Shown here: positions 34,440 through 60,611 of the stretch, piece by piece
Numbering within the stretch: position 1 is the stretch's first letter
How the letters are laid out: each line of letters begins with the position of its first letter
IMG/VR virus record: IMGVR_UViG_3300031951_000001
Span: 248,001 to 312,000 of that record
Reading direction: 5' to 3' (one strand)
DNA length: 64,000 bases
Program-made: the position numbers and the translations under genes
Notes under the pieces: generated by a model
The model's database searches: none
The model's input: the letters and a program-made list of their open reading frames with translations, nothing else
Told to the model about the DNA's origin: nothing

Positions 34440-37400
34440 ATGCCAACAGCACTAATACAATCGGTAAATTATGCGGGACAATATGGGGATATAACATTCA
34501 ATCCCCAAACCGGCGGCACCGTATCTGTAGGTGTGCAACTTTTACCATTTAATTATGTTGCCGATTATGTATATGGGGTTTACGTAGTTTGTTTTTCAGC
34601 CTTTAGTGTTTGCTGTGAATTCAATTTACTTGCACCTACACCGACCCCTACCGCAACAATAACTAAAACGCCTACCATAACTCCAACTGAAACTGTAACT
34701 CCCACAAAAACACCAACTCCGACAATAACCCCCACAATGACCATGACTCCAACCCCATCAACAATATTCTGTGTTGATTGTGTTGAGTCAGGTTATACGT
34801 ATGTCTTCAGTTGTGCCCCAACTCCATCTATAACAAGAACGCCAAGTGTTACACCAACAATTACTTATACACCTACTCAAACATCAACTAAAACTCCTAC
34901 TCAAACACCAACGACGACTCAAACACCAACAATTACCAAGACATCAACTCAAACACCAACAATTACCAAGACATCAACCCCAACTAGAACGCTTACTCCA
35001 ACAGGAACTAATCCTCCATCTGTTCCCGAATGTGCGGTAATATTTAATTCATTACAAAATGTATTTTTCTATGATGTTGACACGGACACTACTACACAAC
35101 TTATAGTTCCTGACACAGTTGGTTCCGCGACAAATGATATTGCCCATACTTCAAGTAAGTTGTGGATGGCTAGTGCCAGTGAGATATACGAATGGGATAT
35201 TACTTTGAGTCCGTTTACCGCGGTATTTAATCGTGTAATTACATTACCATCAGGCATAGGTCCTGGGTTGGGGGCAATTAATAACACAACCTTGATTGCG
35301 GTCCAAAGCGGGGGTAATCCAAAACAGGTTGTTTCGGTAAATATTACTACAAATACTGCGGTATTTACAACTCTATTCCCGATGTTGATAAACAGAGGTG
35401 TTGCGGGAGATATTATTTTAACAACAACAAATAAGGTTATTATTACGACTAACGCGACCGCGGCACCATTCGGACAATTCATAACACAATATAATTTCTT
35501 AAATGGTGACCCTGAAGTCGATATTCAATTGAATCCAACCATCACCCAGCCTTGGGGCATTTTTCAAGATAATGGTGAAATTTATATCATGGATGGTAAC
35601 GAAACTAATAATGTATTCCATATTGATAAAAATTATCCGTACACAATTACATTAACAGGTGATACAGGATATTCGGTGTATGGGGCTTCTCAATTACCAA
35701 ATTGTTTAGATGTAAACTTCATACCTCAAATAACACCAACACCAACCCAAACACCAACCCAAACTCCTACAACGACCCAAACACCAACAGTAACTGTAAC
35801 TGAAACAATTACTAATACCCCAACTAATACCCCAACCCCAACTAAGACACCCGTGTCCTGTGACTGTTTTGAAATAACCGCGGTTGGGAATAATGCGGTT
35901 ATTGACTATTTTAAATGTGGTAGTGAAGGGGTTTCGGTAAGAAAATTAATAGAACCTGCAAGACCATTTAAAGTTTGTTTAGAAAATAGTGGAGTTACTA
36001 CTCTTTCAGGGGTAACTCAAATTAGTAATTTTGGTCCTTGTATTGACGGAGAATGTGCTAGCCCAACCCCAACTCCTACAGTCACCCAAACACCAACAAA
36101 TACATTAACACCTACAATTACCCCAACAAATACATTAACACCTACAATTACCCCAACTGAAACCCAAACTCCCACAATTACCTCAACTAGTACTCAAACC
36201 CCAACTAGTACTCAAACTATAACTCCTACACTTACCCAAAGTCCAACACCAACAGTAACTCTTACTAATACCGTGACACCAACAATTACTGAAACACCAA
36301 CAAGTACGGCAACACAAACACCAACAACTACCACAACCCAAACCCCAACAAGTACAGAAACACCAACCACAACCCAAACTCCAACAAGTACACAAACACC
36401 TACCACAACCCAAACTCCAACCACAACCCAAACTCCAACAAATACAATGACTGTAACTCCGACTCCGGTTTGTATAGACGGATGTTCAGTTTTATATGTC
36501 GATAGTGAATCATTAATTTATTCTTATGACTATAATACAGAAACGTCTACAGTAATTTTTGACCCCAAGGCAACAGTAAGAGATATTGCTAACACTAGCT
36601 CAAGGTTATTCATTACTATCGTAAATAGAATTCAAAGATACAGTTTTTCAACTTGCCCTGTGAGTGTTACATTAATTGATGAAATAACTAGACTTTTCTT
36701 GGGTGATGGTTTATTTGCAATAAATGATACCACATTAATTATAACTAGTACACAAGCAATTGGTCAAGAAAACGTACAAGAATTAAACTATATAACAAAT
36801 ACAGTAACCCCTAAATTCTCACTACCAACCGGTTATTCGGTAAGAGGTGATTTTATTCTAACAACCGGCGGAAAATTCATAGTTTCAATGTTCCAAGGAT
36901 TGAGTAACTATATTTTACAATATGACTATTCAACTGGTGAACAAGAAGTTTTATTCCAAGTTTCTCAAATTATTGCCGGATTCTTTGAATTTGGTGGAAA
37001 TATCTATGCTGTGGATACTTCAGGTATTGTTTATCAAGCAATTTTAGATTCTCCATGGGGGTTAGTTTCTACAACTTTAGACCCATTAACTTTTACAGGG
37101 GTTATTAAAGGTACATCCCAAGAGTTATCGTGTTTACCTACAAATTTTAACATAGTAACCCCAACCCCAACTCCTACCCAAACCCCAACTCCTACTGTCA
37201 CCGTTACCGAAACACCTACTATGACGGTAACTGAAACTCCGACTCAAACGGAAACTCCGACTCAAACCCCAACCAATACTGAAACACCTACACAAACTTC
37301 TACCCCAACACCAACACCTACTTTAGATTGTTTTTGTTACACATTTGTAAACACCAGTTTATTAGACAAACAAAATGTAAGTGGTAAAGATTGTAATAAT

Positions 37401-40400
37401 ATAAATTTTGAGTACTCATTACAAATTTCAGGTTCTGAAGGTGACACCGTAAGTTTATGTGCGTCATCAAGTTTAGTTTTAGACCCATTTATTGCGGTAT
37501 TCAATAACGGAGTTTGCGAAGGATTTTGTGGCACCTCAACACCAACACCAACACCGACAGAGACTCCCACACCAACCATTACTGACACTCCTACACAAAC
37601 CCCAACAATTACCGAAACAAACACACAAACCCCAACTCAAACTCCAACAAACACTGTTACAGAAACATCCACATCAACACCGACCCCAACTCAAACTGAA
37701 ACACCGACAAATACTGTAACCTCTACTCCAACAAATACAGTAACCTCTACCCCAACGATAACATCTACATCAACTCAAACTCCAACGGTTACATCAACTC
37801 CAACTCCATCAATTACCGAGTACAAGCCAGCTATAAGAACATTTAGTGGATGTTGTTTCCCATTTGAAATTTTTAAACTTTATGAAATACCTGGATTAAC
37901 CGCTAACACAATAACTGAAGGTACAGTTTACTACATTGAATCCGGTGTATTTAGCGGTTGTGCTACAAACATTGCCGAAACATTCACACAAAATAATTAT
38001 CTATTTGTTAATATTAGTGCCCAAACTAGTTGTAGCGGTTGTTCGGCATCCTACCCATGCCCGAGCTCAACCCCGACACCTACTGTAACATCAACACCAA
38101 CAGTTACTCCAACGATTACCTCGACTCCAACGATTACCTCGACCCCAACTCAAACTGAAACCCCAACTCAAACTGAAACCCCAACTCAGACACAAACTTC
38201 AACAGTAACATCAACACCTACAGAAAGCCCAACTTCGACACAAACTCAAACTCAGACACAAACTCAAACTGTAACACCAACAAAAACGTCAACCCCAACA
38301 AGAACACCTATTGAGTGTGTTTGTTATTCTATAACCAATATAGGTGAATTTTTTGGTAGTTATAACGGAATTTTATGTAATGGTGGACCTTCAGGAGGAA
38401 TACCAATAGGTCCTGGTGTAACATTTACCGCATGTTATGCTAAAGGGTCACTTCAAACTGTGGGAGGTACTTTAACATTTCTTGAGAATGGGTCTTGTGA
38501 GAACTCAATACTTTGTCCTACTAGAACTCCGACTCCTACAAGAACTGGTACCCCGACCCCGACTCCTACAACTACTGAAACACCTACAAATACCGTAACG
38601 CCAACTACGACAACTACTGAAACACCGACTAGTACATCAACACAAACACCAAGTGTAACCAACACTATAACATCAACACCTACTCAAACATTGTGTTGTA
38701 CCTCATGGACACTATATGGAGGTTTAGGTCAATTACTCGATAATGGATTTGTTATTAAACCTCCTTTGAGGGTAGGGGATGATTTTGCATTGATACCTAC
38801 AAATGTAGGCTCACCTGGTACTTTAGTTGGTCAAGTTTTGGAACTAATCAGTGTTAGCCCTCCACTATCGCCCCAATATTTTACAATTTTAACTGCTACG
38901 TTTAACCCTATAAATTCGGCCTACTTATTAACATTTACCCCTACTTTAACAATTAATTTGGGTAGTACCTTCCAGAGTATAATTTATAACATTTATCAGT
39001 CAGGAGGTACACAATTCAATGTTTACAATTGTGGAGGGTCTCTTACGACTTTGAATTTGAATAACAATGAAATATTGGTCATTCCTTGTTCCTATGATGT
39101 TCAGGTTATATCAGGATTCGGGTATGCTGAGTCTGACCCATCATGTGTATGTGTCACTCAAACTCCAACACCAACATTGACACCTACTGTGACATCAACA
39201 ATAACTCAAACCCCAACAAATACAGTAACCGTTACTCAATATACTTGTAATTGTTATTTTATAAATGTGCCAGACATTAGAGATGGAGTAAATTTAGTAT
39301 TTTTAGATTGTTTGGGTAGTTTGATTTCAATAGCACCAAATAATTTTGGAAATTATTGTGTTAGAGAAATAATTGATTATGGTTCAGGTACCGCCGAACT
39401 TGTAGGACTATGTATAGATGGAAATTGTCCAACACCAACGCCAACTCCAACTCAAACCGAAACCCCAACCCCAACTGAAACTCCAACCCAAACAATTACC
39501 CAAACTCCAACTGTTACTCAGACCTCGACACCAACTGTTACTCAGACCTCGACACCAACTGTTACTATCACGGAATCGGCTACACAAACTCAAACACCAA
39601 CACCGACTGAAACTCCAACTAATACTTTAACACCGACTGTGACAATTACTGAATCTGTTACGCCAACAAGGACATTAACACCAACCAAAACTCAGGCACC
39701 ATGTTTATCTAGCTGTGATGTGTTGTTATTAGACAATGTCGGTAGAGTTTATATATACAATTCAGTCACTAACTCTCCACTGTACTTAGGTATTGATGGT
39801 CCTGATGGTTCCTTCGATATTGCACATACAAATAACAAAATATGGTTAAATAGAGGAACTTCATTATATGAATATGATATAATATTATGTCCGTTCTCGG
39901 CGACATTCAGCAGAGAAATTTCAGGTTCAACGGCATTTAGTGCTGGATTATTTGCAATAAATGACACTACTTTAATTGCTAATAATGGAGCGACCCCTTC
40001 TTCAATTTTAGAGATTGATGTTTCGACTAATCCTTACACAGTTACAACAAAATTCTCTTTATTACCAGGAAGAAGAGTTTCAGGTGATTATGTTCTAACA
40101 AATTCAGGTAAGTTAATTGTTAGTAATTTTTCGGGAACAAACCCAAATGCACCCACTGGTGTTTACATAACACAATATAACTATATAACTTCGGCAACAC
40201 CCCCTGTAGATAACAATGTTGATATATTAATATCCCCAACAATTGTATTCCCATATGGGTTATATCAATATGGAGGTGGTTTCTATATTCTGAGTGCGAA
40301 TGGTACACAATATACTTTAGACCTAAATCCTCCGTACACACTTACCGCGGCACCTACAGTTCCTTTACCTCCAAATACAATCAACGCCGCATATTTTGGT

Positions 40401-43400
40401 GCATCCCAATCCAACGGATGTTTCGACAATAACATAGTACCTGTGTCACCAACACCAACCTCAACTCCAACCCCGACCCCTACCCCAACTGCAACAATAA
40501 CACAAACCCCAACTATAACACAGACTTCAACACCTACACCAACAATAACTTCTACAGTAACACAGACTCCAACCCAAACTCAAACACCAACTTCAACAAT
40601 TACTGTTACACCAACTCAAACAAGTACGGTTACATCAACCCCAACTGTTACATCAACCCCGACACCAACCATAACTGAATACAAGCCGGCAATTAGAACG
40701 TTTAGTGGATGTTGTTTCCCATTTGAAACCTTTAAGATTTTCGAAATACCTGGATTAACCGCAAATTCAATAACTGAAGGCACGGTTTATTACATTGAGT
40801 CCGTAGGATTTAGTGGATGTGCGACAAACATTGCAGAGACATTCACTCAAAACAATTACCTATTTGTTAACTTGAGTGCTCAAACAAGTTGTAGTGGTTG
40901 CTCGACAAATTACCCATGTCCAAGCTCAACACCAACACCTACAGTTACATCGACTCCTACATTAACGCCAACGCAAACCCAAACACCAACGCAAACCCAA
41001 ACACCAACTGAGACATCCACTCAAACACCAACTGAGACATCCACTCAAACACCAACCCAAACTCAAACTTCAACACAAACACCGACTAATACACAAACAT
41101 CAACCAACACCCCTACCACAACAGTAACACCAACTTTGACACGTACTCCTGATACTTGTAATTGCTACACATTCTTTAACATATCAACTTCACAAAGTTT
41201 GACTGTAGATTTTATTGATTGTACAGGCTTACAAAACCAAATTACAATAAATTACGGAAATAGTGCTCAAGTTTGTGTTAAAAATAATATTTTCTCGGGT
41301 ACCCCATCAGGGGCTTTAGTATCATTCTTAAATGGTGATTGTACAAATGGATGTCCGACAACTACCATACAAGCTTGTAACCCATTTGTAGTGAATGGAA
41401 CAAATAGAATTATTTATACTTATGACCCAATAACTAACACACAAATTCCATTACCTATTAATACCGAATCTGTTTCTATATACGATATTGCAACAAATGA
41501 TAACTATTTATGGATATATGGTAATTTCGCAACATTAGGAAATGGTATAAAAGAATATTTTATAACAACATCCCCATTTACATCAAGTTTAAATAGATTT
41601 ATATCGGGTTCTACACTATATCAATCCACAAGAAATGGTTTAGCGGTTTTAAATAACACCACATTAATAACGGCTTCAGGTACGGCTGGTAATGTGATAG
41701 TGAGTTTAAATATTTCATCAAATACTTGGGTTGCAACTCCGTTATTTACTTTACCAACAAATAGAGTCCTAAGGGGTGATTTAACTTATACAAACACAGG
41801 TAATATTATTGCGTTAACTTATAATAATGTTGCGGGTACCGGGTCTTTTTTAACACAGTTTGATTTATTTGGTAATCAGGAATTAGAATTCCAAATAGGT
41901 AATTCTGTTGAAGGATTTGGTTTGTTCATGTATAATTCACAAATATTTACGGTTGCCTCTTCATCGGCGTCTCCCGCTGTAGTTAGAAGAGATTTGAACT
42001 TCCCCTATACATCTTTAACAGTAAACAATATGACAATAACAAATGTTGGGTTTGCCCAACCGTTAAGTTGTTTAAATGTTAATTTCATAGGAGTTACCCG
42101 AACACCAACACAAACCCCAACACCTACCCCAACACCTACTACCACTAAAACTAATACGCCTACATCAACGCAAACCCAAACCCAAACTCCAACTAGAACC
42201 TCAACCCCAACAAACACCCAAACTCCTACTATTACAAGTACCTCCACAATTACTCCTACCGTTACAAGAACCGCCACAATTACTCCTACCGTTACAAGAA
42301 CATCAACGATTACTCCTACCGTTACAAGAACATCAACAATTACTCCAACAATAACACAAACGGCAACCCAAACGAATACCCCAACAGTAACACAAACGGC
42401 AACTGTTACACAAACTGCAACTCAAACTCCTACACCTACCGAAACTTCTAATCTGTTTGCTTGTACTTGTTATAATTTCTTCAACACATCAAATAACCAA
42501 CCCGGAACAGTTACTTATTATAATTGTGATGGGGTATTTAGTTCTGTAACGGTTAGTGCCACTTCATATGTTCAATTATGTGTTTCAGGTAATTCAACAA
42601 ATCCATTATACACCGCAACGACCCAAATTACTGCTATAGATGAGTTAGGTGATTGTACAGTAAGTTGCCCAACAATTAATTTGGATAGTTGTATTTCCTT
42701 TTTAGCTGGGGGGCCGGGTAACATCATTCAATCATATGATTTTCAAACTAATACCACAACTTTTTTACCCATACCAAATAGACCATGGTCAATGCTTGGA
42801 ATTGCAAATACTTCAAATAAACTTTGGGTTCACGGTACTTATCTTGGTTTCACCAGTGGAGGTATAAGAGAATGGGATATAACATTTTCACCGTTTAGTG
42901 CAACATATAATGGCAGAACTATAAACATACAAAGTAATACTATATTACCTAATAGTAATGCATGTGGTTTAGTTGCAATCGATAATTTTAATTTATTAAG
43001 TGTGTCAGGTGCTACTGCAGGGTCCCAAAGTGTGGTTAATGTTGATATTTCAGATACCATAACCAATAACGCGGTATTTACGAAACTTTTTGATTTACCA
43101 AGTAATAGAAGAATATTAACTGATTTAGTTTTTACTCAAACTGGTAAGATTATAATAATGACCCAAACAACTACCCCTGTCAAAATATTTATTACTCAAT
43201 ATGATATACTTGGAAACATTGAGGTTGATGTTCCATTATTCACATCAGGAATAGATGCAAATAGTGGATGGTCTATTTTGATTAATTCTAATAATTTGTA
43301 TATTGTAAGAGCTACTACTCCTGGAGAAATTTATCAGGTAAACTTAACTTCACCATATTCGGCAACCTTACTTTCTGAAAGTTTACCAGTTACTGTGACG

Positions 43401-45788
43401 GACCAATCCCAATCACCAGAGTGTATCACAGTTGAGTTTATACCTGTTACAAAAACACCGACTCCAACACCTACTAAAACTCCAACACCTACCGTGACTA
43501 TGACGATAACGCCAACTTCAGGTGCAACAGAAACACGGACTCCGACGCCGACTACCACTCAAACTTCAACACCAACAATAACATCTACGATTACTCCGAC
43601 AATAACGGCAACACCAACAAGAACGGCGACTCAAACACCAACAATAACAAGAACGGCGACTCAAACACCAACAATAACAAGAACGGCGACTCAAACACCG
43701 ACAATAACAAGAACGGCGACTCAAACACCGACAAGAACTGCGACACCAACAAGAACACCAACTAGAACGGCAACAAATACTCCATCGATTACCCCAACCA
43801 TAAGTATAACTCCAACAATAACCTCAAATTTACCATGTAAATGTTTTAATTTTTACAATACAAGTGATACGGTAAATGGTACTCTTATATACACTGCTTG
43901 TAATTTAACAGTTAGTTCTACAACGGTATCGGCTAATTCATTTGTACAATTGTGTGTAAATTTAAGCGGATATAGTGGGTCATCACAAATAACATTTGTT
44001 AACCAAGTTGGTTCATGTGTAAATGGTTTTTGTCCTAACATATCTATAAATTCTTGTGATTTGTTATCGGTTAAAAAAGAACCTTCTGGTCCGACTAATG
44101 GTCTTTGGCAGATTATGAGTATTAGAAACGAAAGTCTTTTGTATTTGCCGGTTTCTGGTAGAACTGTAGGAACCAACGCTTTAGCGAGAACGTCTAATAA
44201 AGTTTGGGTACTAGGATTTTTTACGGCATTAGGTGGTTCTAGAATAAGGGAATACTCAATTACCCAAAATCCTTGGTCTGCGGTGGTGACTAATAACTAT
44301 ACATTACCGACAAATTTGCCGTCTGTTATCGACAATGGTATGGCGGCAATCGATGATGAGAATTTTATTGTTGGGTCCGGAACTGCATTGAATGTTATTG
44401 CAAAATTAAATGTTTCAGGTGGAATTTTATCATCTACTAAAATTATAGATTTAATATCACCATTTACGGTTTTTGGTGACATGATTTATACTACAACCAA
44501 TAAAGTCATAGTTGCGGTTAAAAATACAATTAATACTAACATATGGCAAATTCACCAATATGATGTTAATGGGACTTTTGAACTGGCGGTAGACGTTTCA
44601 TCTATATCTTTATTTAATTCCGGAATAAATTTCGCGGTAGTTAATAACCAATTATATTTATTACCACATAATCAAACATATAATAATTATTATTTAATTA
44701 ATTTAAATAATCCTTACAATACCACAATTCAGTCGGCTCTTGGAGGTAGTGCCCCAAATGACGTTGCTCAAAATCCTGAATGTATTAATATTCAGTTTAT
44801 CCCTTCTACACAGACACCAACACCAACAAGAACAAAAACTCCGACACCAACAAGAACTCCAACAAGAAGTGCAACACCAACAAGAACTCCAACAAGAAGT
44901 GCAACACCAACAAGAACTCCAACAAGAAGTGCAACACCAACAAGAACTCCAACAAGAAGTGCAACACCAACAAGAACACCAACAATAACCATGAGTCCGT
45001 CGATTACACCAAGTCGAACAGTAACAATGACACCTTCATCTATTGGTATCTATACTCAACCATTGATGGTAAGTTTTTCTGGAACATCTACTGTAATATC
45101 AAGATACGATGTAACAACAAATACTATTACAACTTTAGATGTACAAAGTTCCGGTATTTTACCAAATCAAGATATTGCATGTACTCAAAATAAATTTTGG
45201 TTATCAAATCAGGGGTCTGGTAACATAATAAAAGAATATACTTATACCGCGTCACCTTTCAATTATGTGTTGAATAGAACTTTGAATATACCAGTTACAT
45301 TGACTGATGGATTAACTGTAAGGACTGTGGGAGGTATTGAATATTTGATTGGATGTACAGGTAATACAACTATTGTTGAAATGGATATATCATCAACAAC
45401 GGCCATAGTTACCGATAAATTTGATTTACCTCTTAACAGAACCATAGGTGCTGATATGATGTATACTAATACTGGAAAATTAATAGTTGCCAACTATTCA
45501 GGTGGTAATACAACAGTCGGATTTATGACGCAGTATAACTATGAAACAAATACTTTAGAGATTGATAGGGCATTACCAACTACTTATGCTGCTGGCGGTC
45601 AAAAAGTTTATTTTGTATCTAATAATAATATCTATAGTACTAGTATCTCTGCTAGTCTTTCGGTTGTTTATCAATGGAATACAGATAGTAATATTAACAA
45701 TCCACTTCCATTACAATCCTTCGAGTTACCACTACTTCGTGGAAGCGCTCAACCACAAGAATTCATAAACATTAATTTCACCTCATAA
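34440..45788 (+). CDS. Giant mucin-like modular surface/fibre protein (3782 aa)
   Basis: Uninterrupted ORF; seven ~235-aa repeated modules, multiple 6-Cys and CC modules, T/P linkers. Confidence 0.8.
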   Translation: MPTALIQSVNYAGQYGDITFNPQTGGTVSVGVQLLPFNYVADYVYGVYVVCFSAFSVCCEFNLLAPTPTPTATITKTPTITPTETVTPTKTPTPTITPTMTMTPTPSTIFCVDCVESGYTYVFSCAPTPSITRTPSVTPTITYTPTQTSTKTPTQTPTTTQTPTITKTSTQTPTITKTSTPTRTLTPTGTNPPSVPECAVIFNSLQNVFFYDVDTDTTTQLIVPDTVGSATNDIAHTSSKLWMASASEIYEWDITLSPFTAVFNRVITLPSGIGPGLGAINNTTLIAVQSGGNPKQVVSVNITTNTAVFTTLFPMLINRGVAGDIILTTTNKVIITTNATAAPFGQFITQYNFLNGDPEVDIQLNPTITQPWGIFQDNGEIYIMDGNETNNVFHIDKNYPYTITLTGDTGYSVYGASQLPNCLDVNFIPQITPTPTQTPTQTPTTTQTPTVTVTETITNTPTNTPTPTKTPVSCDCFEITAVGNNAVIDYFKCGSEGVSVRKLIEPARPFKVCLENSGVTTLSGVTQISNFGPCIDGECASPTPTPTVTQTPTNTLTPTITPTNTLTPTITPTETQTPTITSTSTQTPTSTQTITPTLTQSPTPTVTLTNTVTPTITETPTSTATQTPTTTTTQTPTSTETPTTTQTPTSTQTPTTTQTPTTTQTPTNTMTVTPTPVCIDGCSVLYVDSESLIYSYDYNTETSTVIFDPKATVRDIANTSSRLFITIVNRIQRYSFSTCPVSVTLIDEITRLFLGDGLFAINDTTLIITSTQAIGQENVQELNYITNTVTPKFSLPTGYSVRGDFILTTGGKFIVSMFQGLSNYILQYDYSTGEQEVLFQVSQIIAGFFEFGGNIYAVDTSGIVYQAILDSPWGLVSTTLDPLTFTGVIKGTSQELSCLPTNFNIVTPTPTPTQTPTPTVTVTETPTMTVTETPTQTETPTQTPTNTETPTQTSTPTPTPTLDCFCYTFVNTSLLDKQNVSGKDCNNINFEYSLQISGSEGDTVSLCASSSLVLDPFIAVFNNGVCEGFCGTSTPTPTPTETPTPTITDTPTQTPTITETNTQTPTQTPTNTVTETSTSTPTPTQTETPTNTVTSTPTNTVTSTPTITSTSTQTPTVTSTPTPSITEYKPAIRTFSGCCFPFEIFKLYEIPGLTANTITEGTVYYIESGVFSGCATNIAETFTQNNYLFVNISAQTSCSGCSASYPCPSSTPTPTVTSTPTVTPTITSTPTITSTPTQTETPTQTETPTQTQTSTVTSTPTESPTSTQTQTQTQTQTVTPTKTSTPTRTPIECVCYSITNIGEFFGSYNGILCNGGPSGGIPIGPGVTFTACYAKGSLQTVGGTLTFLENGSCENSILCPTRTPTPTRTGTPTPTPTTTETPTNTVTPTTTTTETPTSTSTQTPSVTNTITSTPTQTLCCTSWTLYGGLGQLLDNGFVIKPPLRVGDDFALIPTNVGSPGTLVGQVLELISVSPPLSPQYFTILTATFNPINSAYLLTFTPTLTINLGSTFQSIIYNIYQSGGTQFNVYNCGGSLTTLNLNNNEILVIPCSYDVQVISGFGYAESDPSCVCVTQTPTPTLTPTVTSTITQTPTNTVTVTQYTCNCYFINVPDIRDGVNLVFLDCLGSLISIAPNNFGNYCVREIIDYGSGTAELVGLCIDGNCPTPTPTPTQTETPTPTETPTQTITQTPTVTQTSTPTVTQTSTPTVTITESATQTQTPTPTETPTNTLTPTVTITESVTPTRTLTPTKTQAPCLSSCDVLLLDNVGRVYIYNSVTNSPLYLGIDGPDGSFDIAHTNNKIWLNRGTSLYEYDIILCPFSATFSREISGSTAFSAGLFAINDTTLIANNGATPSSILEIDVSTNPYTVTTKFSLLPGRRVSGDYVLTNSGKLIVSNFSGTNPNAPTGVYITQYNYITSATPPVDNNVDILISPTIVFPYGLYQYGGGFYILSANGTQYTLDLNPPYTLTAAPTVPLPPNTINAAYFGASQSNGCFDNNIVPVSPTPTSTPTPTPTPTATITQTPTITQTSTPTPTITSTVTQTPTQTQTPTSTITVTPTQTSTVTSTPTVTSTPTPTITEYKPAIRTFSGCCFPFETFKIFEIPGLTANSITEGTVYYIESVGFSGCATNIAETFTQNNYLFVNLSAQTSCSGCSTNYPCPSSTPTPTVTSTPTLTPTQTQTPTQTQTPTETSTQTPTETSTQTPTQTQTSTQTPTNTQTSTNTPTTTVTPTLTRTPDTCNCYTFFNISTSQSLTVDFIDCTGLQNQITINYGNSAQVCVKNNIFSGTPSGALVSFLNGDCTNGCPTTTIQACNPFVVNGTNRIIYTYDPITNTQIPLPINTESVSIYDIATNDNYLWIYGNFATLGNGIKEYFITTSPFTSSLNRFISGSTLYQSTRNGLAVLNNTTLITASGTAGNVIVSLNISSNTWVATPLFTLPTNRVLRGDLTYTNTGNIIALTYNNVAGTGSFLTQFDLFGNQELEFQIGNSVEGFGLFMYNSQIFTVASSSASPAVVRRDLNFPYTSLTVNNMTITNVGFAQPLSCLNVNFIGVTRTPTQTPTPTPTPTTTKTNTPTSTQTQTQTPTRTSTPTNTQTPTITSTSTITPTVTRTATITPTVTRTSTITPTVTRTSTITPTITQTATQTNTPTVTQTATVTQTATQTPTPTETSNLFACTCYNFFNTSNNQPGTVTYYNCDGVFSSVTVSATSYVQLCVSGNSTNPLYTATTQITAIDELGDCTVSCPTINLDSCISFLAGGPGNIIQSYDFQTNTTTFLPIPNRPWSMLGIANTSNKLWVHGTYLGFTSGGIREWDITFSPFSATYNGRTINIQSNTILPNSNACGLVAIDNFNLLSVSGATAGSQSVVNVDISDTITNNAVFTKLFDLPSNRRILTDLVFTQTGKIIIMTQTTTPVKIFITQYDILGNIEVDVPLFTSGIDANSGWSILINSNNLYIVRATTPGEIYQVNLTSPYSATLLSESLPVTVTDQSQSPECITVEFIPVTKTPTPTPTKTPTPTVTMTITPTSGATETRTPTPTTTQTSTPTITSTITPTITATPTRTATQTPTITRTATQTPTITRTATQTPTITRTATQTPTRTATPTRTPTRTATNTPSITPTISITPTITSNLPCKCFNFYNTSDTVNGTLIYTACNLTVSSTTVSANSFVQLCVNLSGYSGSSQITFVNQVGSCVNGFCPNISINSCDLLSVKKEPSGPTNGLWQIMSIRNESLLYLPVSGRTVGTNALARTSNKVWVLGFFTALGGSRIREYSITQNPWSAVVTNNYTLPTNLPSVIDNGMAAIDDENFIVGSGTALNVIAKLNVSGGILSSTKIIDLISPFTVFGDMIYTTTNKVIVAVKNTINTNIWQIHQYDVNGTFELAVDVSSISLFNSGINFAVVNNQLYLLPHNQTYNNYYLINLNNPYNTTIQSALGGSAPNDVAQNPECINIQFIPSTQTPTPTRTKTPTPTRTPTRSATPTRTPTRSATPTRTPTRSATPTRTPTRSATPTRTPTITMSPSITPSRTVTMTPSSIGIYTQPLMVSFSGTSTVISRYDVTTNTITTLDVQSSGILPNQDIACTQNKFWLSNQGSGNIIKEYTYTASPFNYVLNRTLNIPVTLTDGLTVRTVGGIEYLIGCTGNTTIVEMDISSTTAIVTDKFDLPLNRTIGADMMYTNTGKLIVANYSGGNTTVGFMTQYNYETNTLEIDRALPTTYAAGGQKVYFVSNNNIYSTSISASLSVVYQWNTDSNINNPLPLQSFELPLLRGSAQPQEFININFTS
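34758..34877 (+). repeat. 120-nt dispersed repeat, copy 2
   Basis: [26 protein letters not shown](K/R)[13 protein letters not shown]. Confidence 0.9.
37810..38070 (+). repeat. ~260-nt dispersed repeat (CC module), paired with ~40670-40930
   Basis: Both encode EYKPAIRTFSGCCFPFE...CPSSTP, with mostly third-position differences. Confidence 0.85.
42241..42346 (+). repeat. 30-nt tandem repeat x~3.5 (coding)
   Basis: Core ATTACTCCTACCGTTACAAGAA is identical in three units. Confidence 0.85.
43621..43733 (+). repeat. 30-nt tandem repeat x~3.8 (coding)
   Basis: GAACGGCGACTCAAACACC(A/G)ACAATAACAA. Confidence 0.9.
44851..44977 (+). repeat. Exact 30-nt tandem repeat x4 (coding)
   Basis: CAAGAACTCCAACAAGAAGTGCAACACCAA x4 plus a partial copy; encodes a 10-aa TRTPTRSATP unit. 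Confidence 0.95.
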
Positions 45789-50384: not shown

Positions 50385-52757
50385 ATGGATTTGTTTAATC
50401 CCCCACCAAATTTCAACTATAAAAAAATGATTCATAAGTTAGATACTAATTCGCTTGATAATCCATACATACAGGTCGTATGGGAGGATTATGCTGAAAA
50501 TATCACGCAAGAAAAGATAAAAAGCGTAAGACATTATTTTCAAAAGAAGTATCTATCAACAAATGTTAATGTCATAACCAAGACAAAGACATCTGATGAG
50601 ACCGTTCAGACAGTTGATATTTCATTCAATGTATTGGATAAGAATTATCAACTTGAATTAATGAAGTCTTTTTTAACTAATAAGGGTAATGATAACCTTT
50701 ATGATGAAATTTATAAGTTGGATGGTATTGTTGATAGTAAGTTGGCGATGGATGACTCTGAAGTAACACCATTCAAACGGTGGTATATCAAAAAAATAGA
50801 GTTCTCTAACTTTCTATCATATGGGGAAAATCAAGTTGTTGATTTCACAAAGTGTGATGGTATCACGGTGATTGAGTCTAACCCACCAAACTTTGGAGGT
50901 AAGACCGTATTGTCGGTTGACTTGTTATTGTTCCTATTCTTCAATGAGACTACCAAGACATCAAAGGCTGAAGAGGTATTCAATCGTTTCACGGATAAGA
51001 ACAAGGTATCTGTCAAAGGTGAAATCATTATTGATGGTGATGAATACATTATTGTTCGTAACATTGAACGTAAGAAGTCTAAAGCTGGTGATTGGAATGT
51101 TAAGACCGAGCTAGACTTCTTTAAGAAACTATCTGATGGTAGTCTTATGAATTTCACTGGTGAGCAAAGACGTGAGACTGAAACGTTTATCAAGAATTCT
51201 ATTGGGTCAAAGGAAGATTTTCTTATGACTATCCTTACAACGGCAACTAATCTTGAGGATTTGATTGACTCTAAACCAACAGCTCGTGGTCAAGTGTTAT
51301 CACGATTTATGGGTCTTGAGTTTCTAAAACGTAAGGAAGACGCTGCGAAGGAAGTGTTCAGTGAGTTTTCAAAATCAATGATTTCAAATGTTCATAATAG
51401 TGAGCAATTGAAAACTGAAATTGAGAATTGTAAAAACGGTATTCAAGAACATAAGAATACCATTGGTGAGAGACAGAGTGAATTAATTGATGTTCAGAAC
51501 AGAATTATCAAAGGTCAAGAATATCGTGATGGGTTGTTAAAGAACAAACACACCGATATTGATAAAGAGATTAGTATGGTACAACCGGCTCAAGTTAAGT
51601 CCGAGATTGCCGACCTAAACTTCAAGAAAGATGTTGTGGTTAAACAATTATCTGAAGTCAAAGTTGTTGAACCATCCAAGTATTATCACGAAGACAAACA
51701 CGATAAAGTTAAAGATGAATACAACAAATCATTTAAACAAATGGTTGAGGTTGAAAGTAAGATTAAATCAATTGAAGAATTAAAGAGTTCTGTTGAAGGT
51801 GGAATAAAATGTGAACACTGTGGAATTGACTTAATGATGGCCTCAATTACACAATCTAAAATTGCCGAACTTGATGGTTATATCCAGCAAAAAGACCAAA
51901 TTTATACCACAATGCAGGTTTTAACCAGCACAGAACAAACATTTGTTAGACTTAAAAAAGAATTTGATGAATACGAAAAGAATAAACTAGTCAAAGAAAA
52001 ACTCGACTTGAGCATTGAAAGTTTTGATATGAAAATTGAGAAACTCCATGACAAATTGAAAAAGTACGAAGAGGCCCAAGACAAAATTCAAGAAAATACC
52101 AAAATTGAAGAACAACTCCTCAAAGCCAATATGAGACTTGACGATTTGGAAAATCAAAAAACGTCAGTTAATAATGAGTTAACTCGTCTCAACTTTGACA
52201 TTGAAAAACTTAATGATAAGATTGATAATAACAATAAGATTATTGAGAAGATAAAGCAAGAAGCGGAGAGAGAAAAAATCTATAAAGTTTATTTGGAGAT
52301 TTATGGTAAGAACGGAATTTCAAAGATTATCATGAAAACCATGATGCCACTTATCAACTCTGAACTTCAAAGACTTTTAGAAAACAGTTGTCATTTCAGA
52401 TTGGAAATTCAAATTAATGAAAAGAATGAGGTTGAATTCATCATGGTTGATAACAATACCCAAGTTGAAAAACTTATGTCATCAGGGTCAGGGTATGAAC
52501 GTACAATAGCATCGCTGGCGTTAAGAGCGGTATTAAGTAAGATATGTTCATTACCAAAACCAAATATCATAGTTTTTGATGAAGTTTTTGGTAAAATATC
52601 TAATGATAATCTTGAAATGGTTTCAGAATTTTTCACAAAAATCAAAGATTATTTTGAAAAAATTTTCTTAATAACTCACAATCCATTAGTTACCAACTGG
52701 TCGGATAATGTTATCAGGATTAGAAAGGAAGAAAATATTAGCTACGTGTCACAATAA
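50385..52757 (+). CDS. sbcC: gp46/SbcC/Rad50-like SMC ATPase with an N-terminal extension
   Basis: KIEFSNFLSYG, variant Walker A NFGGKT, coiled coils, CEHC hook, signature-like SGSGYE, Walker B IVFDEVFG, and LITH. Confidence 0.88.
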   Translation: MDLFNPPPNFNYKKMIHKLDTNSLDNPYIQVVWEDYAENITQEKIKSVRHYFQKKYLSTNVNVITKTKTSDETVQTVDISFNVLDKNYQLELMKSFLTNKGNDNLYDEIYKLDGIVDSKLAMDDSEVTPFKRWYIKKIEFSNFLSYGENQVVDFTKCDGITVIESNPPNFGGKTVLSVDLLLFLFFNETTKTSKAEEVFNRFTDKNKVSVKGEIIIDGDEYIIVRNIERKKSKAGDWNVKTELDFFKKLSDGSLMNFTGEQRRETETFIKNSIGSKEDFLMTILTTATNLEDLIDSKPTARGQVLSRFMGLEFLKRKEDAAKEVFSEFSKSMISNVHNSEQLKTEIENCKNGIQEHKNTIGERQSELIDVQNRIIKGQEYRDGLLKNKHTDIDKEISMVQPAQVKSEIADLNFKKDVVVKQLSEVKVVEPSKYYHEDKHDKVKDEYNKSFKQMVEVESKIKSIEELKSSVEGGIKCEHCGIDLMMASITQSKIAELDGYIQQKDQIYTTMQVLTSTEQTFVRLKKEFDEYEKNKLVKEKLDLSIESFDMKIEKLHDKLKKYEEAQDKIQENTKIEEQLLKANMRLDDLENQKTSVNNELTRLNFDIEKLNDKIDNNNKIIEKIKQEAEREKIYKVYLEIYGKNGISKIIMKTMMPLINSELQRLLENSCHFRLEIQINEKNEVEFIMVDNNTQVEKLMSSGSGYERTIASLALRAVLSKICSLPKPNIIVFDEVFGKISNDNLEMVSEFFTKIKDYFEKIFLITHNPLVTNWSDNVIRIRKEENISYVSQ

Positions 52758-56513: not shown

Positions 56514-56869
56514 TGAACTTGAAAGATATTATAAGTAATTTACTAATCATCGCAGTTGGTGCTTTGGTTGTGTATTCATTAATGCTTACTACAGATTTAA
56601 GTGTTGATGTTAAATCTTACTATGACAGAGTTGATGGGTTACAGACCAAAATTGATTCTGCTATGGCGGTCAATCAAAGAATTGACAATAAAATTGCTAA
56701 ACTCGACTCGGCTATTTTGGTTATTAATAACGAAATACACCTTGTTGATGAAAACATAAACATAATTAAAACTAGAACAAATGCCAAAGTTTCTGCTGTT
56801 GATAATTTTAACTATTCTGAACTTCAAAAGTTTTTCTCAAAAAGATACAACCCAAATAACCCTAAGTAA
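56510..56869 (+). CDS. N-anchored coiled-coil membrane protein (spanin-like candidate)
   Basis: N-terminal TM followed by a long heptad helix. Confidence 0.5.
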   Translation: MMNLKDIISNLLIIAVGALVVYSLMLTTDLSVDVKSYYDRVDGLQTKIDSAMAVNQRIDNKIAKLDSAILVINNEIHLVDENINIIKTRTNAKVSAVDNFNYSELQKFFSKRYNPNNPK

Positions 56870-57188
56870 CCAAACTGCCAAGTTAGTTATAAAGGATATT
56901 TTAGCCGGTGACGGGTGTAAAGAAGAGCTCGAGCAAACTTACCTAAAGATTGCTAAAATGGAGGAAAGAGATATCCAAAAGGATAGTGTTATTTATTTCC
57001 TTAAAGAAAAGGATTTAAATAATCAAAACATTATAGGTTATAAAGATGGTCAAATAGGACAATTAAGAGAATTGTCTAAAAATTTAGAAGACGCAATAGA
57101 AGACCAAAATGATAAAATAAAATGGTGGAGACGAGGAGCTATTGCTGGAGGAGTTACCACATTACTATTATTAATAATTGCTTTTTAA
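56781..57188 (+). CDS. Signal-peptide coiled-coil protein with a C-terminal TM (spanin-like candidate)
   Basis: MPKFLLLIILTILNFKSFSQ signal-like start; KWWRRGAIAGGVTTLLLLIIAF tail; 89-nt overlap with the upstream gene. Confidence 0.5.
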   Translation: MPKFLLLIILTILNFKSFSQKDTTQITLSNQTAKLVIKDILAGDGCKEELEQTYLKIAKMEERDIQKDSVIYFLKEKDLNNQNIIGYKDGQIGQLRELSKNLEDAIEDQNDKIKWWRRGAIAGGVTTLLLLIIAF

Positions 57189-57189
57189 C

Positions 57190-57435
57190 ATGGCACTTTC
57201 AGACACCGATAAAAAACAAATTGAAGTCATGATACGTAAAGAAATCAAAGACTTCATTGGTAGTAATACCATGAGACAATATGAAGACAAACTTATTGAC
57301 ACTATTTCTCGAGAAATCAAAAGAGGAAAGATTGAGGGAGATGTTAAAGAGGTAGTCATAAAAGTATTCAGAGAGTTTTACAATTTTATGTGGACTCAAA
57401 GAGGATATTGGGAACCAAGATTGAAAAATGCTTAA
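57190..57435 (+). CDS. Hypothetical protein
   Basis: MALSDTDKKQIE...; start moved to ATG 57190, 1 nt after the upstream stop. Confidence 0.6.
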   Translation: MALSDTDKKQIEVMIRKEIKDFIGSNTMRQYEDKLIDTISREIKRGKIEGDVKEVVIKVFREFYNFMWTQRGYWEPRLKNA

Positions 57436-57673
57436 AGAAGAAGAAAGTTTTACCAATAGGCTTAAAAGTGAAATTAATACCCAAGCCGGTAGAAGTGGTG
57501 TCGTACATAAGTATGGTAGTGACGCGGTAATGTCAATTAATAAACTTACACAATCTTTAGGTGAGGATGAAATGGAAGAGGACTGGTCTGAAAAGTATAA
57601 AAAAAGTATTGACTGTAATAACCCAAAGGATTTAGTCAAAGAGCTCATTGTCAAGGGAGGAAAAAGAAAATGA
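57428..57673 (+). CDS. Hypothetical protein; 0-frame half of an apparent frameshifted gene
   Basis: Reads ...DWSEKYKKSIDCNNPK in frame 0; the motif continues in the -1 frame. Confidence 0.55.
   Translation: MLKEEESFTNRLKSEINTQAGRSGVVHKYGSDAVMSINKLTQSLGEDEMEEDWSEKYKKSIDCNNPKDLVKELIVKGGKRK
57622..57628 (+). other. Candidate -1 slippery heptamer C CCA AAG (or site of a 1-nt deletion)
   Basis: X XXY YYZ in the correct phase; the -1 frame is open from 57622 into ORF 57670..58395 and closed by TAA at 57619-21. Confidence 0.5.
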
Positions 57674-58395
57674 AAGAAAATATAACCGAAGCCGAAAGAA
57701 CATTAATGGCAAGATTGAAAGACTTGGCAAGAAAACACGTCAAGGGTGACTCAAAAGATGCTAACCGAAAGGAAAAAATACAAAAAATGTTTGACATGTT
57801 AGTAAAACAACTTCACAAAGGTACAAAGGTGGAGATGGAACACGACATGGGTAAAGAGGAGGCTCAAAAAATAGCTTTAGACCATTTGGAGGAATTTCCT
57901 GATTATTATACACGTTTAAAAAAGGCGGAGGCGGCTGAAGCCACAGGCTCGGGCTCGGCTGGTGGGTTTGAGGTCCCCTTATTTTCTGAACCAAAAAAAC
58001 TTGATAGTATGTTCAAATCAGAACAACCTAAAAAGAAAGTTAAAGGAGGTTTTGTTAATGACGAAACCCCCAAGAAGGTCGAGGCTACCGAAGCTACCAG
58101 CTCTTCTTCTGTTGGTGCCTATGACGCACCAGGTTTTGAAGATGTTAAAATGAAAGGTAATAATGAACGTGGTTCAGGTAGGTCATATAAGAATACACAA
58201 ATACCTGGTGGAAAATTTGTTAAAGTTAAGGAAAAATGTAAAAAATTTCCTTATTGTAATCAGGGAGATATTAAAGCTTTGAAAATTTGGGAGAATAAGA
58301 CACTCCAAAAAGTCATAACAGACATAAGTAAAAAACAGAATATTAGTGAGAGTGTAATCAAAAATATTATTGCTTACGAACTAGGATTAATTTAA
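57670..58395 (+). CDS. Hypothetical putative head-associated protein; -1 frame half
   Basis: 241-aa K/E-rich ORF; KCKKFPYCNQG motif. Confidence 0.6.
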   Translation: MKENITEAERTLMARLKDLARKHVKGDSKDANRKEKIQKMFDMLVKQLHKGTKVEMEHDMGKEEAQKIALDHLEEFPDYYTRLKKAEAAEATGSGSAGGFEVPLFSEPKKLDSMFKSEQPKKKVKGGFVNDETPKKVEATEATSSSSVGAYDAPGFEDVKMKGNNERGSGRSYKNTQIPGGKFVKVKEKCKKFPYCNQGDIKALKIWENKTLQKVITDISKKQNISESVIKNIIAYELGLI

Positions 58396-58404
58396 TTAAA
58401 TTGA

Positions 58405-58412
58405 TATTTATA
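58405..58412 (+). promoter_or_regulatory. Putative late promoter motif TATTTAT
   Basis: TATTTATA upstream of 58427. Confidence 0.5.
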
Positions 58413-58426
58413 TAAAAAAATTAAAG

Positions 58427-59839
58427 ATGAGACAAAAACTTAACGAAACCTATATTAATAGTTTGGTTGAAAAAATTATCAACGAAACTATCCATGAAAA
58501 GGCTGAACAAATCGAAAATATGTTGATGGGTAAGGAGACTGAAGAAGGTAATGCCTTTACAGCAGCTCTCGCTAAAACTAAAAAAGGAGAAAAATTTAAG
58601 GTAGGTGATAATACATTTACCGATACTTCGGATTATAATGAAGGTGAATTGGGTGAGGGTGAAAGTGTTTGTGAACAATGTGGTGCTAAAGGTCCTATCA
58701 TGGAAGGAAACATGTGTGAACAGTGTTCAATGAAAGAAGGTGTTTACGAGGAAGAAGATATGGATGTAATGGATATGGAAGATGATGAGGATGAACAAAA
58801 CAAAGAGTTTTGTCAATATCAAAAAAGTAAAATCGATAGTGAAGACGATGAAGATGTTAGAAATGATATGGTTCAGAGATATGAAGAAAAATGCTCTAGC
58901 ATGGAAAAGAGCATGAAAGACTTAGCTCGCAGACCAATTAACATGAATGAAAAATTAGTAGGAGGACAAAAAAGGTTAGATAAAAACAATAATGGAAGAC
59001 TTGACTCTGAAGATTTTAAAATGTTGAGAAAAAGTAAAAAAAGTGGTGGCGAAACTAAGGAAATTTGGGGAGCTTTGGCAGGTGCTGCTGAAGCGGCTTT
59101 ACCTTATGTGGCTCCGGCGGCAACTGATTGGGCTTTAGACAAAATGTTTGGTGAAAATGTCGAGAAAAAAAATACAATAACAATGACCGAAGGAGAACTA
59201 ATTAACTTCATTGAAAAAATTATCAAAGAAGAAAAATTGAAAGCAACTACTAAACATAAAGGATTAGCGACTTATGAAAAAGCTCACAAAGGTTCAGGTA
59301 AAGAGAACGAAGATTATCTAAAGAGTGTCACTAAAAAAATGAAAGACTATTTAAAAGATGGTTCTAAAGGGGATTATGAAACTGAACCTGACTTTTTCCC
59401 AAAAGGAAATGGTGAATTGGGTGATATGAAAAAGAAGGCTTATATACCTTCAGACGCGGTTCAAGACTATGTAGATAATCTTACTGCCGCTGGTCAAGAA
59501 AACCTTGATTATGATGAAATACATCCTAATGAAGATTGGGTAAGTGATAACATTGAGGGGTCATCAAGAACAGGTAATAATCCTGAATGGGCAAATACTG
59601 GTAAATCTGATGTTAATAAAAAGAGAAACGAGATACGTGAGAAGAATATGTTGGCAAAGATTAAGAGAAAGGCTTACAATAAAGCACCACAACCTGTTGT
59701 TACCGATGAGACTGGCGATACAGGTACTGGTAAGTTAATGATGAAGCTAGAATCTGAAAACGAGAAGACAACTCAAAAATTGAATGAAGAATTTGATAGA
59801 ATGAAACAACTTCTCGGTTACAGTCAAAAAACACAATAA
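58427..59839 (+). CDS. Acidic putative head-internal/scaffold-like protein with CxxC pairs and a Ca-binding-like loop
   Basis: TATTTAT upstream; CEQC x2; LDKNNNGRLDSEDF; repeated LVEKIINE / FIEKIIKEE / LNEEFDRMKQLL motifs. Confidence 0.55.
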   Translation: MRQKLNETYINSLVEKIINETIHEKAEQIENMLMGKETEEGNAFTAALAKTKKGEKFKVGDNTFTDTSDYNEGELGEGESVCEQCGAKGPIMEGNMCEQCSMKEGVYEEEDMDVMDMEDDEDEQNKEFCQYQKSKIDSEDDEDVRNDMVQRYEEKCSSMEKSMKDLARRPINMNEKLVGGQKRLDKNNNGRLDSEDFKMLRKSKKSGGETKEIWGALAGAAEAALPYVAPAATDWALDKMFGENVEKKNTITMTEGELINFIEKIIKEEKLKATTKHKGLATYEKAHKGSGKENEDYLKSVTKKMKDYLKDGSKGDYETEPDFFPKGNGELGDMKKKAYIPSDAVQDYVDNLTAAGQENLDYDEIHPNEDWVSDNIEGSSRTGNNPEWANTGKSDVNKKRNEIREKNMLAKIKRKAYNKAPQPVVTDETGDTGTGKLMMKLESENEKTTQKLNEEFDRMKQLLGYSQKTQ

Positions 59840-60428: not shown

Positions 60429-60611
60429 ATGGATACACTAGAACAAATCAAGTCCCTCACAGAAGAATTGTCTGTTGATGCGACTAAATTTTTCAAGGGT
60501 AATAAGAGTGCCGGTACTAGAGCTAGAAAGTCAGCTCAAGAATTGAAAGCTCTTTTACAAACTTTGAGAAACGAAATTTTGGACGAAAGAAAAAAAACTG
60601 AGGATGCTTAA
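60429..60611 (+). CDS. Histone H1-like (Hc1 family) small DNA-binding protein
   Basis: KGNKSAGTRARKSAQELK matches the Hc1 / Bacteroidota histone-H1-like core KGNKAAGxRARK. Confidence 0.75.
   Translation: MDTLEQIKSLTEELSVDATKFFKGNKSAGTRARKSAQELKALLQTLRNEILDERKKTEDA

What the first reader, a model, noticed from the sequence alone, without database searches (positions are those of the whole stretch)
57428..58395. Apparent -1 frameshift at a correctly phased C CCA AAG slippery site fusing two ORFs
Seen in the sequence: ORF 57428 reads ...SIDCNNPK across C CCA AAG (57622-28), an X XXY YYZ heptamer in the correct phase. Slipping -1 gives GFSQRAHCQGRKKK, which runs with no stop into the ATG of 57670..58395, making a 322-aa fusion. 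The -1 frame is closed by TAA immediately before the heptamer, so the switch cannot happen further upstream. From memory (unverified), WSxKYKxSIxCxNPKGFSQxAHCxGRKK occurs as one contiguous motif in proteins of large uncultured phages, so the -1 product looks like the conserved one. The alternatives are programmed frameshifting (short plus fused product), a recent 1-nt deletion, or an assembly error in the A run. I see no strong stimulatory hairpin. A GGGAGG 9 nt before ATG 57670 could allow independent initiation.
Basis: partly seen in the sequence, partly recalled or inferred. Interest (0 to 1): 0.72.

Follow-up and report, generated by a model that had tools for sequence, protein, structure and literature searches.

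The report
One missing A splits phage gene
The two ORFs are one ordinary, widely conserved phage gene that this single assembled record shows broken by the loss of one A from a run of four, not a programmed ribosomal frameshift.

Summary
ORF 57428..57673 and ORF 57670..58395 are two frames of one gene, C CCA AAG (57622-57628) is in phase, and a -1 shift there gives a 322-aa protein.

- Every other copy of this phage reads AAC CCA AAA GGA, with four A's. That covers Logan contigs of 4 public runs, 3 IMG/VR contigs and a 322,892-bp JGI contig, all otherwise identical to the window.
- The intact 322-aa protein lies on at least 24 contigs. The frameshifted 81-aa ORF1 lies on exactly one, the window's own source contig (JGI 3300031951, Ga0315904_10000010).
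- Of 80 related viral loci, none is split. The Asn-Pro-Lys-Gly codons vary synonymously, so the heptamer is not conserved; it is a by-product of the deletion.
- There is no downstream RNA structure and no upstream Shine-Dalgarno-like element.

The break is therefore a private single-base loss, either an assembly error or a private null allele. Raw reads of the source sample would decide which.

The protein carries DUF5661 and belongs to a family of unknown function in aquatic T4-like and jumbo phages. Interest is low.

The parts
57428..58395 (+). One gene for a 322-aa DUF5661-family phage protein, broken in this record by a 1-nt deletion
   Evidence: The intact protein P0124, from sibling contigs with 0 mismatches, is 322 aa. 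The top database hit P0003 is 322 aa, 98% identical and continuous.
57625..57627 (+). A3 run that is A4 in every other copy of this phage; this is the site of the missing base
   Evidence: read-laying table 4: 'A put in behind 57624' in all 4 runs. All four pattern hits (3 IMG/VR contigs, 1 JGI contig) have the 39-nt (four-A) form; the three IMG/VR hits were read and show AACCCAAAAGG. blastn gives 0 mismatches and 1 gap over 2-10 kb and over 12 kb of G001.
57622..57628 (+). C CCA AAG heptamer, created by the deletion (the intact sequence reads C CCA AAA G)
   Evidence: The nearest other strain reads CCG AAA. Relatives use CCA/CCT/CCC/CCG with AAA/AAG.
57428..57673 (+). ORF1, 81 aa: residues 1-67 are authentic; the last 14 (DLVKELIVKGGKRK) are out-of-frame read-through
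   Evidence: This exact 81-aa product lies on one contig only, the window's own source record.
57670..58395 (+). ORF2, 241 aa: residues 82-322 of the intact protein. Its ATG codes an internal Met that relatives do not conserve.
   Evidence: Relatives have T, V or L at that position.
57584..57669 (+). Coding region of the invariant W-S-x-K-Y-K-x-S-I-x-C-x-N-P-K-G-F-S-Q-x-A-H-C-x-G-basic motif, cut in two by the deletion
   Evidence: Invariant columns W53...G77 in A2 and A3. Word depth rises at 57611-57711 because many related phages share this stretch.
57802..57930 (+). DUF5661 (PF18905) core
   Evidence: Pfam E 9.2e-11, 42.4 bits against a cut-off of 27, residues 61-103 of P0002. It is the best-predicted helical part of the model, with pLDDT 74-90.
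58201..58281 (+). Conserved C-terminal motif I-P-G-G-K-F-V-x-V-K-x-K-C-K-x-F-P-Y-C-N-Q-G-D-I
   Evidence: Invariant columns in A2 and A3. Second rise in word depth at 58217-58317.
57655..57660 (+). GGGAGG, 9 nt before ATG 57670. In the intact gene it codes Gly-Arg of the conserved QGRKKK. It could drive re-initiation only in the broken allele.

Best explanation
57428..58395 is one continuous gene for a 322-aa DUF5661-family protein of a roughly 322-kb freshwater T4-like jumbo phage. The window's record has lost one A from an A4 run: AAC CCA AAA GGA has become AAC CCA AAG GAT. That single loss creates three things at once: the frame break, the apparent slippery heptamer, and the ATGA 'overlap' with an internal Met codon.

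The loss is private to this one contig, so it is not an evolved recoding signal. It is either an error of that one assembly or a private or minor null allele in that sample. I lean slightly to error (about 55:40), but the tools here cannot separate the two.

Shown: the deletion, its privacy to this record, and the continuity of the gene everywhere else. Inferred: which of error or real allele applies.
For: 1. Same strain, other assemblies.
- Logan contigs of four runs from four different studies were laid on 56500-59500. The only indel listed is an A inserted behind 57624. Depth with the insertion over total depth is 37.1/43.6, 80.8/80.8, 119/329.7 and 30.8/30.8.
- Every contig that has 0 other differences and spans the site has exactly that one gap.
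- A pattern scan that allowed either form found 3 IMG/VR contigs and one 322,892-bp JGI contig, all with the 39-nt (four-A) form; the three IMG/VR contigs were read and show A4.
- These four contigs are 100% identical to the window over 1,965-10,118 bp apart from that one gap.

2. Gene index.
- The frameshifted 81-aa ORF1 lies on one contig only, Ga0315904_10000010 (322,372 bp), which is the window's own source.
- The intact 322-aa P0124 lies on at least 24 contigs, listed in 39 index blocks.
- A run search with a 61-nt stretch across the junction listed none. The flanks are held by more than 15 runs, and none of those reaches a share of 1.00.

3. Relatives.
- 4,003 homologues were found, typically 300-320 aa, and they cover the -1 frame query from its first residues.
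- P66, K67, G68 and F69, which straddle the break, are invariant.
- Of 80 viral loci, 45 carry the motif in the same ORF as the C-terminal motif, 35 lack the motif altogether, and none is split.
- The codons at N-P-K-G vary synonymously. The nearest other strain reads CCG AAA.

4. No stimulator.
- The 82 nt downstream fold at -3.7 kcal/mol, z = +1.53, and 191 of 200 shuffles fold at least as well.
- There is no GGAGG-like element in 57600-57621.

5. The record is otherwise clean. It differs from sibling record G001 by only 2 single-base indels in 200 kb.
Against: - No raw reads of the source sample (JGI 3300031951) could be inspected. Logan contigs drop rare variants, so a real A3 allele in that sample is not excluded.
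- Short-read assemblers rarely miscount a run of only four A's, which argues for a real allele rather than an error.
- C CCA AAG is intrinsically shift-prone in E. coli (PMC5009743), so some -1 product could be made if the allele exists.
Confidence: 0.93

Rival explanations
1. The A3 allele is a genuine mutant in the source lake sample and is partly rescued. Either a few percent of ribosomes slip -1 on the newly made C CCA AAG and restore the exact wild-type protein (adventitious 'compensatory' frameshifting), or ORF2 is re-initiated at the ATGA overlap behind GGGAGG and gives a protein lacking its N-terminal part.
For: - C_CCA_AAG is described as highly shift-prone in E. coli, and compensatory frameshifting at indels is a recognised class (PMC5009743).
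- The slip would reproduce N-P-K-G exactly.
- 35 of 80 relatives lack the N-terminal motif altogether, so a protein made of the DUF5661 and C-terminal parts alone is viable elsewhere.
- The sibling strains do differ by real indels.
- Miscounting an A4 run is unusual for a short-read assembly (my own knowledge).
Against: - The allele is seen on one contig only.
- It is absent from contigs of 4 runs and from 4 other assemblies of the same strain.
- No junction words were found in any listed run.
- There is no stimulatory structure.
- Nothing shows that the unknown host's ribosomes slip here.
Confidence: 0.06
2. This is an evolved programmed -1 ribosomal frameshift that makes a short 81-aa product and a 322-aa fusion in a set ratio, as in dnaX or the phage tail chaperone G/GT.
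For: A phased heptamer of a shift-prone type; the -1 frame is closed just upstream and open downstream; the fusion equals the conserved protein.
Against: - The heptamer and the split are absent from all other copies of the same phage and from all 80 related loci and the sampled homologues.
- The zero-frame tail of 14 residues has no counterpart in any relative.
- The break cuts an invariant motif in two.
- There is no stimulator.
Confidence: 0.01
3. These are two genuinely separate, translationally coupled genes (ATGA overlap), as in marine cyanophages where the motif is a stand-alone small ORF.
For: In Synechococcus phages SynMITS9220M01 and S-SM2 the motif ends a small ORF that overlaps the next gene.
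Against: - In those phages the motif is intact and the boundary lies after the basic tail.
- Here the break lies inside the motif, between NPK and GFSQ.
- ORF1's tail is out-of-frame sequence, and all other copies of this phage have a single ORF.
Confidence: 0.01

Closest known systems
[quoted passage not shown]
   Same: A phased heptameric sequence of the shift-prone class, with the -1 frame continuing into a longer product.
   Different: The known sites are conserved across relatives and usually have an upstream SD-like or downstream structural stimulator. Here the heptamer exists in one record only, is made by a deletion, and has no stimulator.
Single-base homopolymer indels in assembled contigs, or private frameshift (pseudogene) alleles
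   Same: One base lost from a short A run, private to one contig, breaking an otherwise universally continuous and conserved ORF.
   Different: Nothing differs in kind. The only open point is whether the loss lies in the DNA of that sample or only in its assembly.
'Corrective' or compensatory frameshifting at indels, e.g. the herpesvirus thymidine kinase G-run (reviewed in PMC5009743)
   Same: An indel in a homopolymer leaves a sequence on which a low level of slippage would restore the original protein.
   Different: Here there is no evidence that the allele exists in nature beyond one contig, nor of any product.
Cyanophage hypothetical proteins that carry the same motif: S-SRM01 QPX48171.1, S-SM2 SSM2_108 (ADO97450.1), SynMITS9220M01_096 (QJT70109.1)
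   Same: The W..KYK.SI.C..PKGFSQ.AHC.G-basic module, 70-82% identical over about 35 residues. In S-SRM01 a DUF5661-like stretch follows it, as here.
   Different: The architecture differs: a stand-alone 39-aa ORF, the C-terminus of a 142-aa protein, or the N-terminus of a 609-aa protein. All are annotated hypothetical, and no function is known.

Membership tests
Programmed -1 ribosomal frameshift site | Phased X XXY YYZ heptamer at the point where the frames change | tested here: met
   C CCA AAG at 57622-57628, in phase. Such heptamers are common here: 148 phased ones in 19,386 codons.
Programmed -1 ribosomal frameshift site | The heptamer and the two-frame gene arrangement are conserved in relatives | tested here: not met
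   All other copies of the same phage have A4 and one ORF. None of 80 related loci is split, and the codons vary synonymously.
Programmed -1 ribosomal frameshift site | A stimulatory element: a downstream hairpin or pseudoknot, or an upstream SD-like sequence | tested here: not met
   The downstream 82 nt have MFE -3.7 kcal/mol and z = +1.53. No GGAGG-like sequence lies in the 22 nt upstream.
Programmed -1 ribosomal frameshift site | Both the zero-frame and the shifted product are made | not testable with these tools
   This needs a reporter assay, mass spectrometry or ribosome profiling. The metatranscriptome runs hold only 0.06-0.07 of the words.
DUF5661 (Pfam PF18905) | Score above Pfam's gathering threshold | tested here: met
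   42.4 bits against a cut-off of 27, E 9.2e-11. The intact relative P0003 gives the same result.
Assembly-private single-base indel or private null allele | The variant is confined to one record, while near-identical genomes carry the intact form | tested here: met
   The ORF1 product lies on 1 contig; the intact product lies on at least 24 contigs. There are 0 mismatches and 1 gap against 4 other assemblies.
Assembly-private single-base indel or private null allele | Raw reads of the source sample disagree with the contig (error) or agree with it (real allele) | not testable with these tools
None can be tied with certainty to JGI 3300031951.

The most novel reading that the evidence does not exclude
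The A3 allele is real in the source lake population and survives because the deletion itself created a highly shift-prone C CCA AAG. Spontaneous -1 slippage on it rebuilds the exact wild-type 322-aa protein at a low level. This would be a natural, newly arisen case of compensatory frameshifting in an uncultured jumbo phage.
Probability: 0.04. Interest if true: 0.45.

Novelty: not a real feature. Interest (0 to 1): 0.07.

Why it matters
The main value is as a caution. A perfectly phased, textbook slippery heptamer that joins two ORFs into a conserved protein can be nothing more than the footprint of a single-base deletion in a homopolymer, because losing one Y from X XXY YYY Z always leaves X XXY YYZ. 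For annotation, the two ORFs should be merged or flagged as one disrupted gene. The gene family is large (more than 4,000 members, with invariant Cys/His motifs) and unstudied in aquatic T4-like and jumbo phages, but that is separate from the finding.

Tried and rejected
Function of the protein. None of these searches gave a lead.
- PHROGs gave only insignificant hits.
- PDB by sequence profile gave only eS1 at E 0.03, taken as spurious lysine-rich matches.
- The AlphaFold model from a 64-sequence alignment was poor: mean pLDDT 59, pTM 0.29, residues 174-268 disordered.
- Foldseek against the PDB gave no match with E <= 0.001.
- The ESM Atlas returned only DUF5661 'hypothetical protein' clusters from viruses.
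- No paper mentions DUF5661.

Readings considered and rejected.
- Transcriptional slippage: I reject it because a run of 3-4 A is far shorter than known slippage tracts (my own knowledge).
- Another genetic code: nothing suggests one, since all large ORFs are open under table 11.
- A chimeric assembly path through a co-occurring relative (L013 type, AAT CCC AAA GGA): I judge it implausible, because the two share only about 12 nt around the site (inference).

Searches that gave little.
- A second run search with a junction-spanning 61-mer listed none. It used only 2 sampled words, so it is weak evidence.

Full report
**What is in the window**

The window is bases 248,001-312,000 of a 322,372-bp IMG/VR virus record that CheckV rates 100% complete. 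GC content is about 34%. The window carries a T4-type baseplate wedge gene, an SbcC/gp46-like gene, an amidase, an Hc1 histone-like ORF and giant ORFs of up to 3,782 aa. More than 15 lake-water or freshwater metagenome runs hold it. It is therefore a freshwater T4-like jumbo phage.

At the finding:
- ORF1 (57428..57673, 81 aa) ends in a TGA that overlaps ATG 57670 of ORF2 (57670..58395, 241 aa), which lies in the -1 frame.
- The -1 frame shows TAA TAA at 57616-57621 and is open from 57622 onward.
- C CCA AAG lies at 57622-57628, in phase.
- GGGAGG lies at 57655-57660.

**The two ORFs are one conserved gene**

Searching with the -1 frame translation (P0002) returned 4,003 homologues. Most are 300-320 aa and cover the query from its first residues. 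The best hit, P0003, is 322 aa and 98% identical. It reads straight through ...SIDCNNPKGFSQRAHC....

In alignments of 20 and of 64 diverse members, W53, Y57, K58, S60, I61, C63, P66, K67, G68, F69, S70, Q71, A73, H74, C75 and G77 are invariant. The break in the window falls between K67 and G68, inside the most conserved block of the protein.

It also occurs, always contiguous, in cultured cyanophages:
- as a stand-alone 39-aa ORF in SynMITS9220M01;
- at the C-terminus of the 142-aa SSM2_108 in S-SM2;
- at residues 3-31 of a 609-aa protein of the freshwater phage S-SRM01, followed by a DUF5661-like stretch.

**The break is a one-base deletion private to this record**

- The nearest other strain (three contigs encoding P0003) reads AAC CCG AAA GGA where the window reads AAC CC- AAA GGA.
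- For the window's own strain, Logan contigs of four runs from four different studies were laid on 56500-59500. The only indel listed is 'A put in behind 57624', and it appears in all four runs.
- In those runs, every contig that is otherwise identical to the window and spans the site has exactly that one gap.
- A pattern scan allowing either A3 or A3+N found three IMG/VR contigs from other samples and a 322,892-bp JGI contig. All four matches have the 39-nt (four-A) form, and the three IMG/VR contigs, read directly, show AACCCAAAAGG.
- blastn shows these four to be 100% identical to the window over 6,444, 5,518, 1,965 and 10,118 bp, apart from that single gap.

In the gene index the two forms are very unequal. 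The frameshifted 81-aa ORF1 product lies on exactly one contig, Ga0315904_10000010 of JGI sample 3300031951 (322,372 bp). That contig is the window's own source. The intact 322-aa protein P0124 equals the conceptual -1 fusion, since the DNA has 0 mismatches. It lies on at least 24 contigs in 39 index blocks, nine of which hold contigs of 0.2-1 Mb.

A run search with a 61-nt junction-spanning stretch listed no run (only 2 sampled words). The best holders of the flanks stop at a share of 0.99, not 1.00. That fits those two junction words being absent everywhere, though this last step is inference.

**The heptamer is a by-product, not a signal**

Losing one A from C CCA AAA G necessarily leaves C CCA AAG. 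A -1 slip on it necessarily rebuilds N-P-K-G.

Among 80 related viral loci:
- 45 carry the motif in the same continuous ORF as the C-terminal PYCNQG motif;
- 35 lack the N-terminal motif entirely;
- none is split.

The four codons vary synonymously: AAC/AAT, CCA/CCT/CCC/CCG, AAA/AAG, GGA/GGT/GGG/GGC.

No stimulator is present. The 82 nt downstream fold at only -3.7 kcal/mol (z = +1.53), and 191 of 200 shuffles fold at least as well. The upstream 22 nt hold no SD-like element. Phased X XXY YYZ heptamers are frequent in this AT-rich genome, at 148 per 19,386 codons.

**Assembly error or real allele?**

Over 200 kb shared with sibling record G001 (IMG/VR 3300008114_000012), the two genomes differ by about 30 substitutions and several larger indels. 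Only two differences are single-base indels: this one, and an A5/A4 difference at G000 237,931 where G001 is the shorter. So the record is not a noisy long-read assembly, and the loss is a singular event.

Evidence for an assembly error:
- The allele is seen nowhere else, including in runs flagged as possible sources of this DNA.
- The site lies in a stretch that many co-occurring phages share. Word depth jumps about 3- to 9-fold at 57611-57711, and Logan contigs break at 57625-57647.

Evidence for a real allele:
- Short-read assemblers seldom miscount four A's.
- These strains show genuine indel diversity.

I put it at roughly 55:40 for error against a real private allele. Only raw reads of sample 3300031951 can decide.

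If the allele is real, it would most simply be a null or hypomorphic allele. ORF2 might re-initiate behind GGGAGG, and relatives that lack the N-terminal motif show that such an architecture can exist. Some spontaneous slippage is also conceivable, because C_CCA_AAG is called highly shift-prone in E. coli (PMC5009743). That would be adventitious, not programmed.

**What the protein is**

It has three conserved blocks separated by low-complexity linkers:
- an N-terminal block with invariant W, C and H-C residues;
- a helical DUF5661 core (PF18905, E 9e-11);
- a C-terminal block, K-C-K-x-F-P-Y-C-N-Q-G-D, followed by helices.

The linkers are predicted to be disordered. The invariant Cys/His pairs suggest metal binding or disulfides, but that is inference only. 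No PDB, PHROG, Atlas or literature lead to a function was found. The function is unknown. The family is confined to viruses in the Atlas clusters and, among cultured phages, to T4-like cyanophages.

**Verdict**

The programmed-frameshift interpretation is rejected. The feature is a private single-base deletion in one assembled record of an otherwise continuous, conserved phage gene. Interest is low. The annotation should treat 57428..58395 as one disrupted gene.

Noticed in passing
window 34522-34600: These 79 nt lie within the first 55 codons of the 3,782-aa ORF 34440..45788. They are absent from sibling record G001 (IMG/VR 3300008114_000012). The length is not a multiple of 3, so in G001 the ATG is out of frame with the giant ORF. 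This may be a second strain or assembly indel, this time in the other record.
   Followed up: partly
window ~44874-44925 and ~51799-51957: Two in-frame length differences against G001: a 60-nt copy-number change in a Pro/Thr-coding repeat of the giant ORF, and 162 nt (54 codons) of the SbcC-like gene 50385..52757 that G001 lacks.
   Followed up: partly
G000 ends (outside the window): G000 321929-322372 and 1-611: Sibling contig G001 runs straight across the two ends of the window's genome record. The 322-kb record is therefore a complete, circularly permuted or terminally redundant genome, although IMG/VR labels it 'linear'.
   Followed up: partly
L098:786-905, L097:486-914, L099:1195-1800 (cultured cyanophages): The W..KYK.SI.C..PKGFSQ.AHC.G-basic module is mobile. 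It is a stand-alone 39-aa ORF in SynMITS9220M01, the C-terminus of a 142-aa protein in S-SM2, and the N-terminus of a 609-aa protein in S-SRM01. In the first two it ends in an overlap with the next gene. It is an unstudied mini-domain with invariant Cys and His-Cys.
   Followed up: partly
window 57918-57924: A phased A AAA AAG, the classic dnaX-type heptamer, lies inside ORF2 at ...RLKKAE.... By reading the sequence, the -1 frame closes after four Gly codons. Relatives read KLEK or KLKK with other codons, so this is probably chance.
   Followed up: partly
window 60429-60611: A 60-aa ORF matches the chlamydial histone H1-like protein Hc1 (PF07432, E 5.5e-20). This is a nucleoid-condensing type of protein encoded by a jumbo phage.
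   Followed up: no
window 58427-59839: The next gene (470 aa) has no Pfam or PHROG hit. It differs in length from the nearest strain (420 aa in L001), and the window-L001 alignment breaks, skipping window 59033-59165; in L002 identity falls to 83% beyond that point. It is a fast-evolving neighbour.
   Followed up: no
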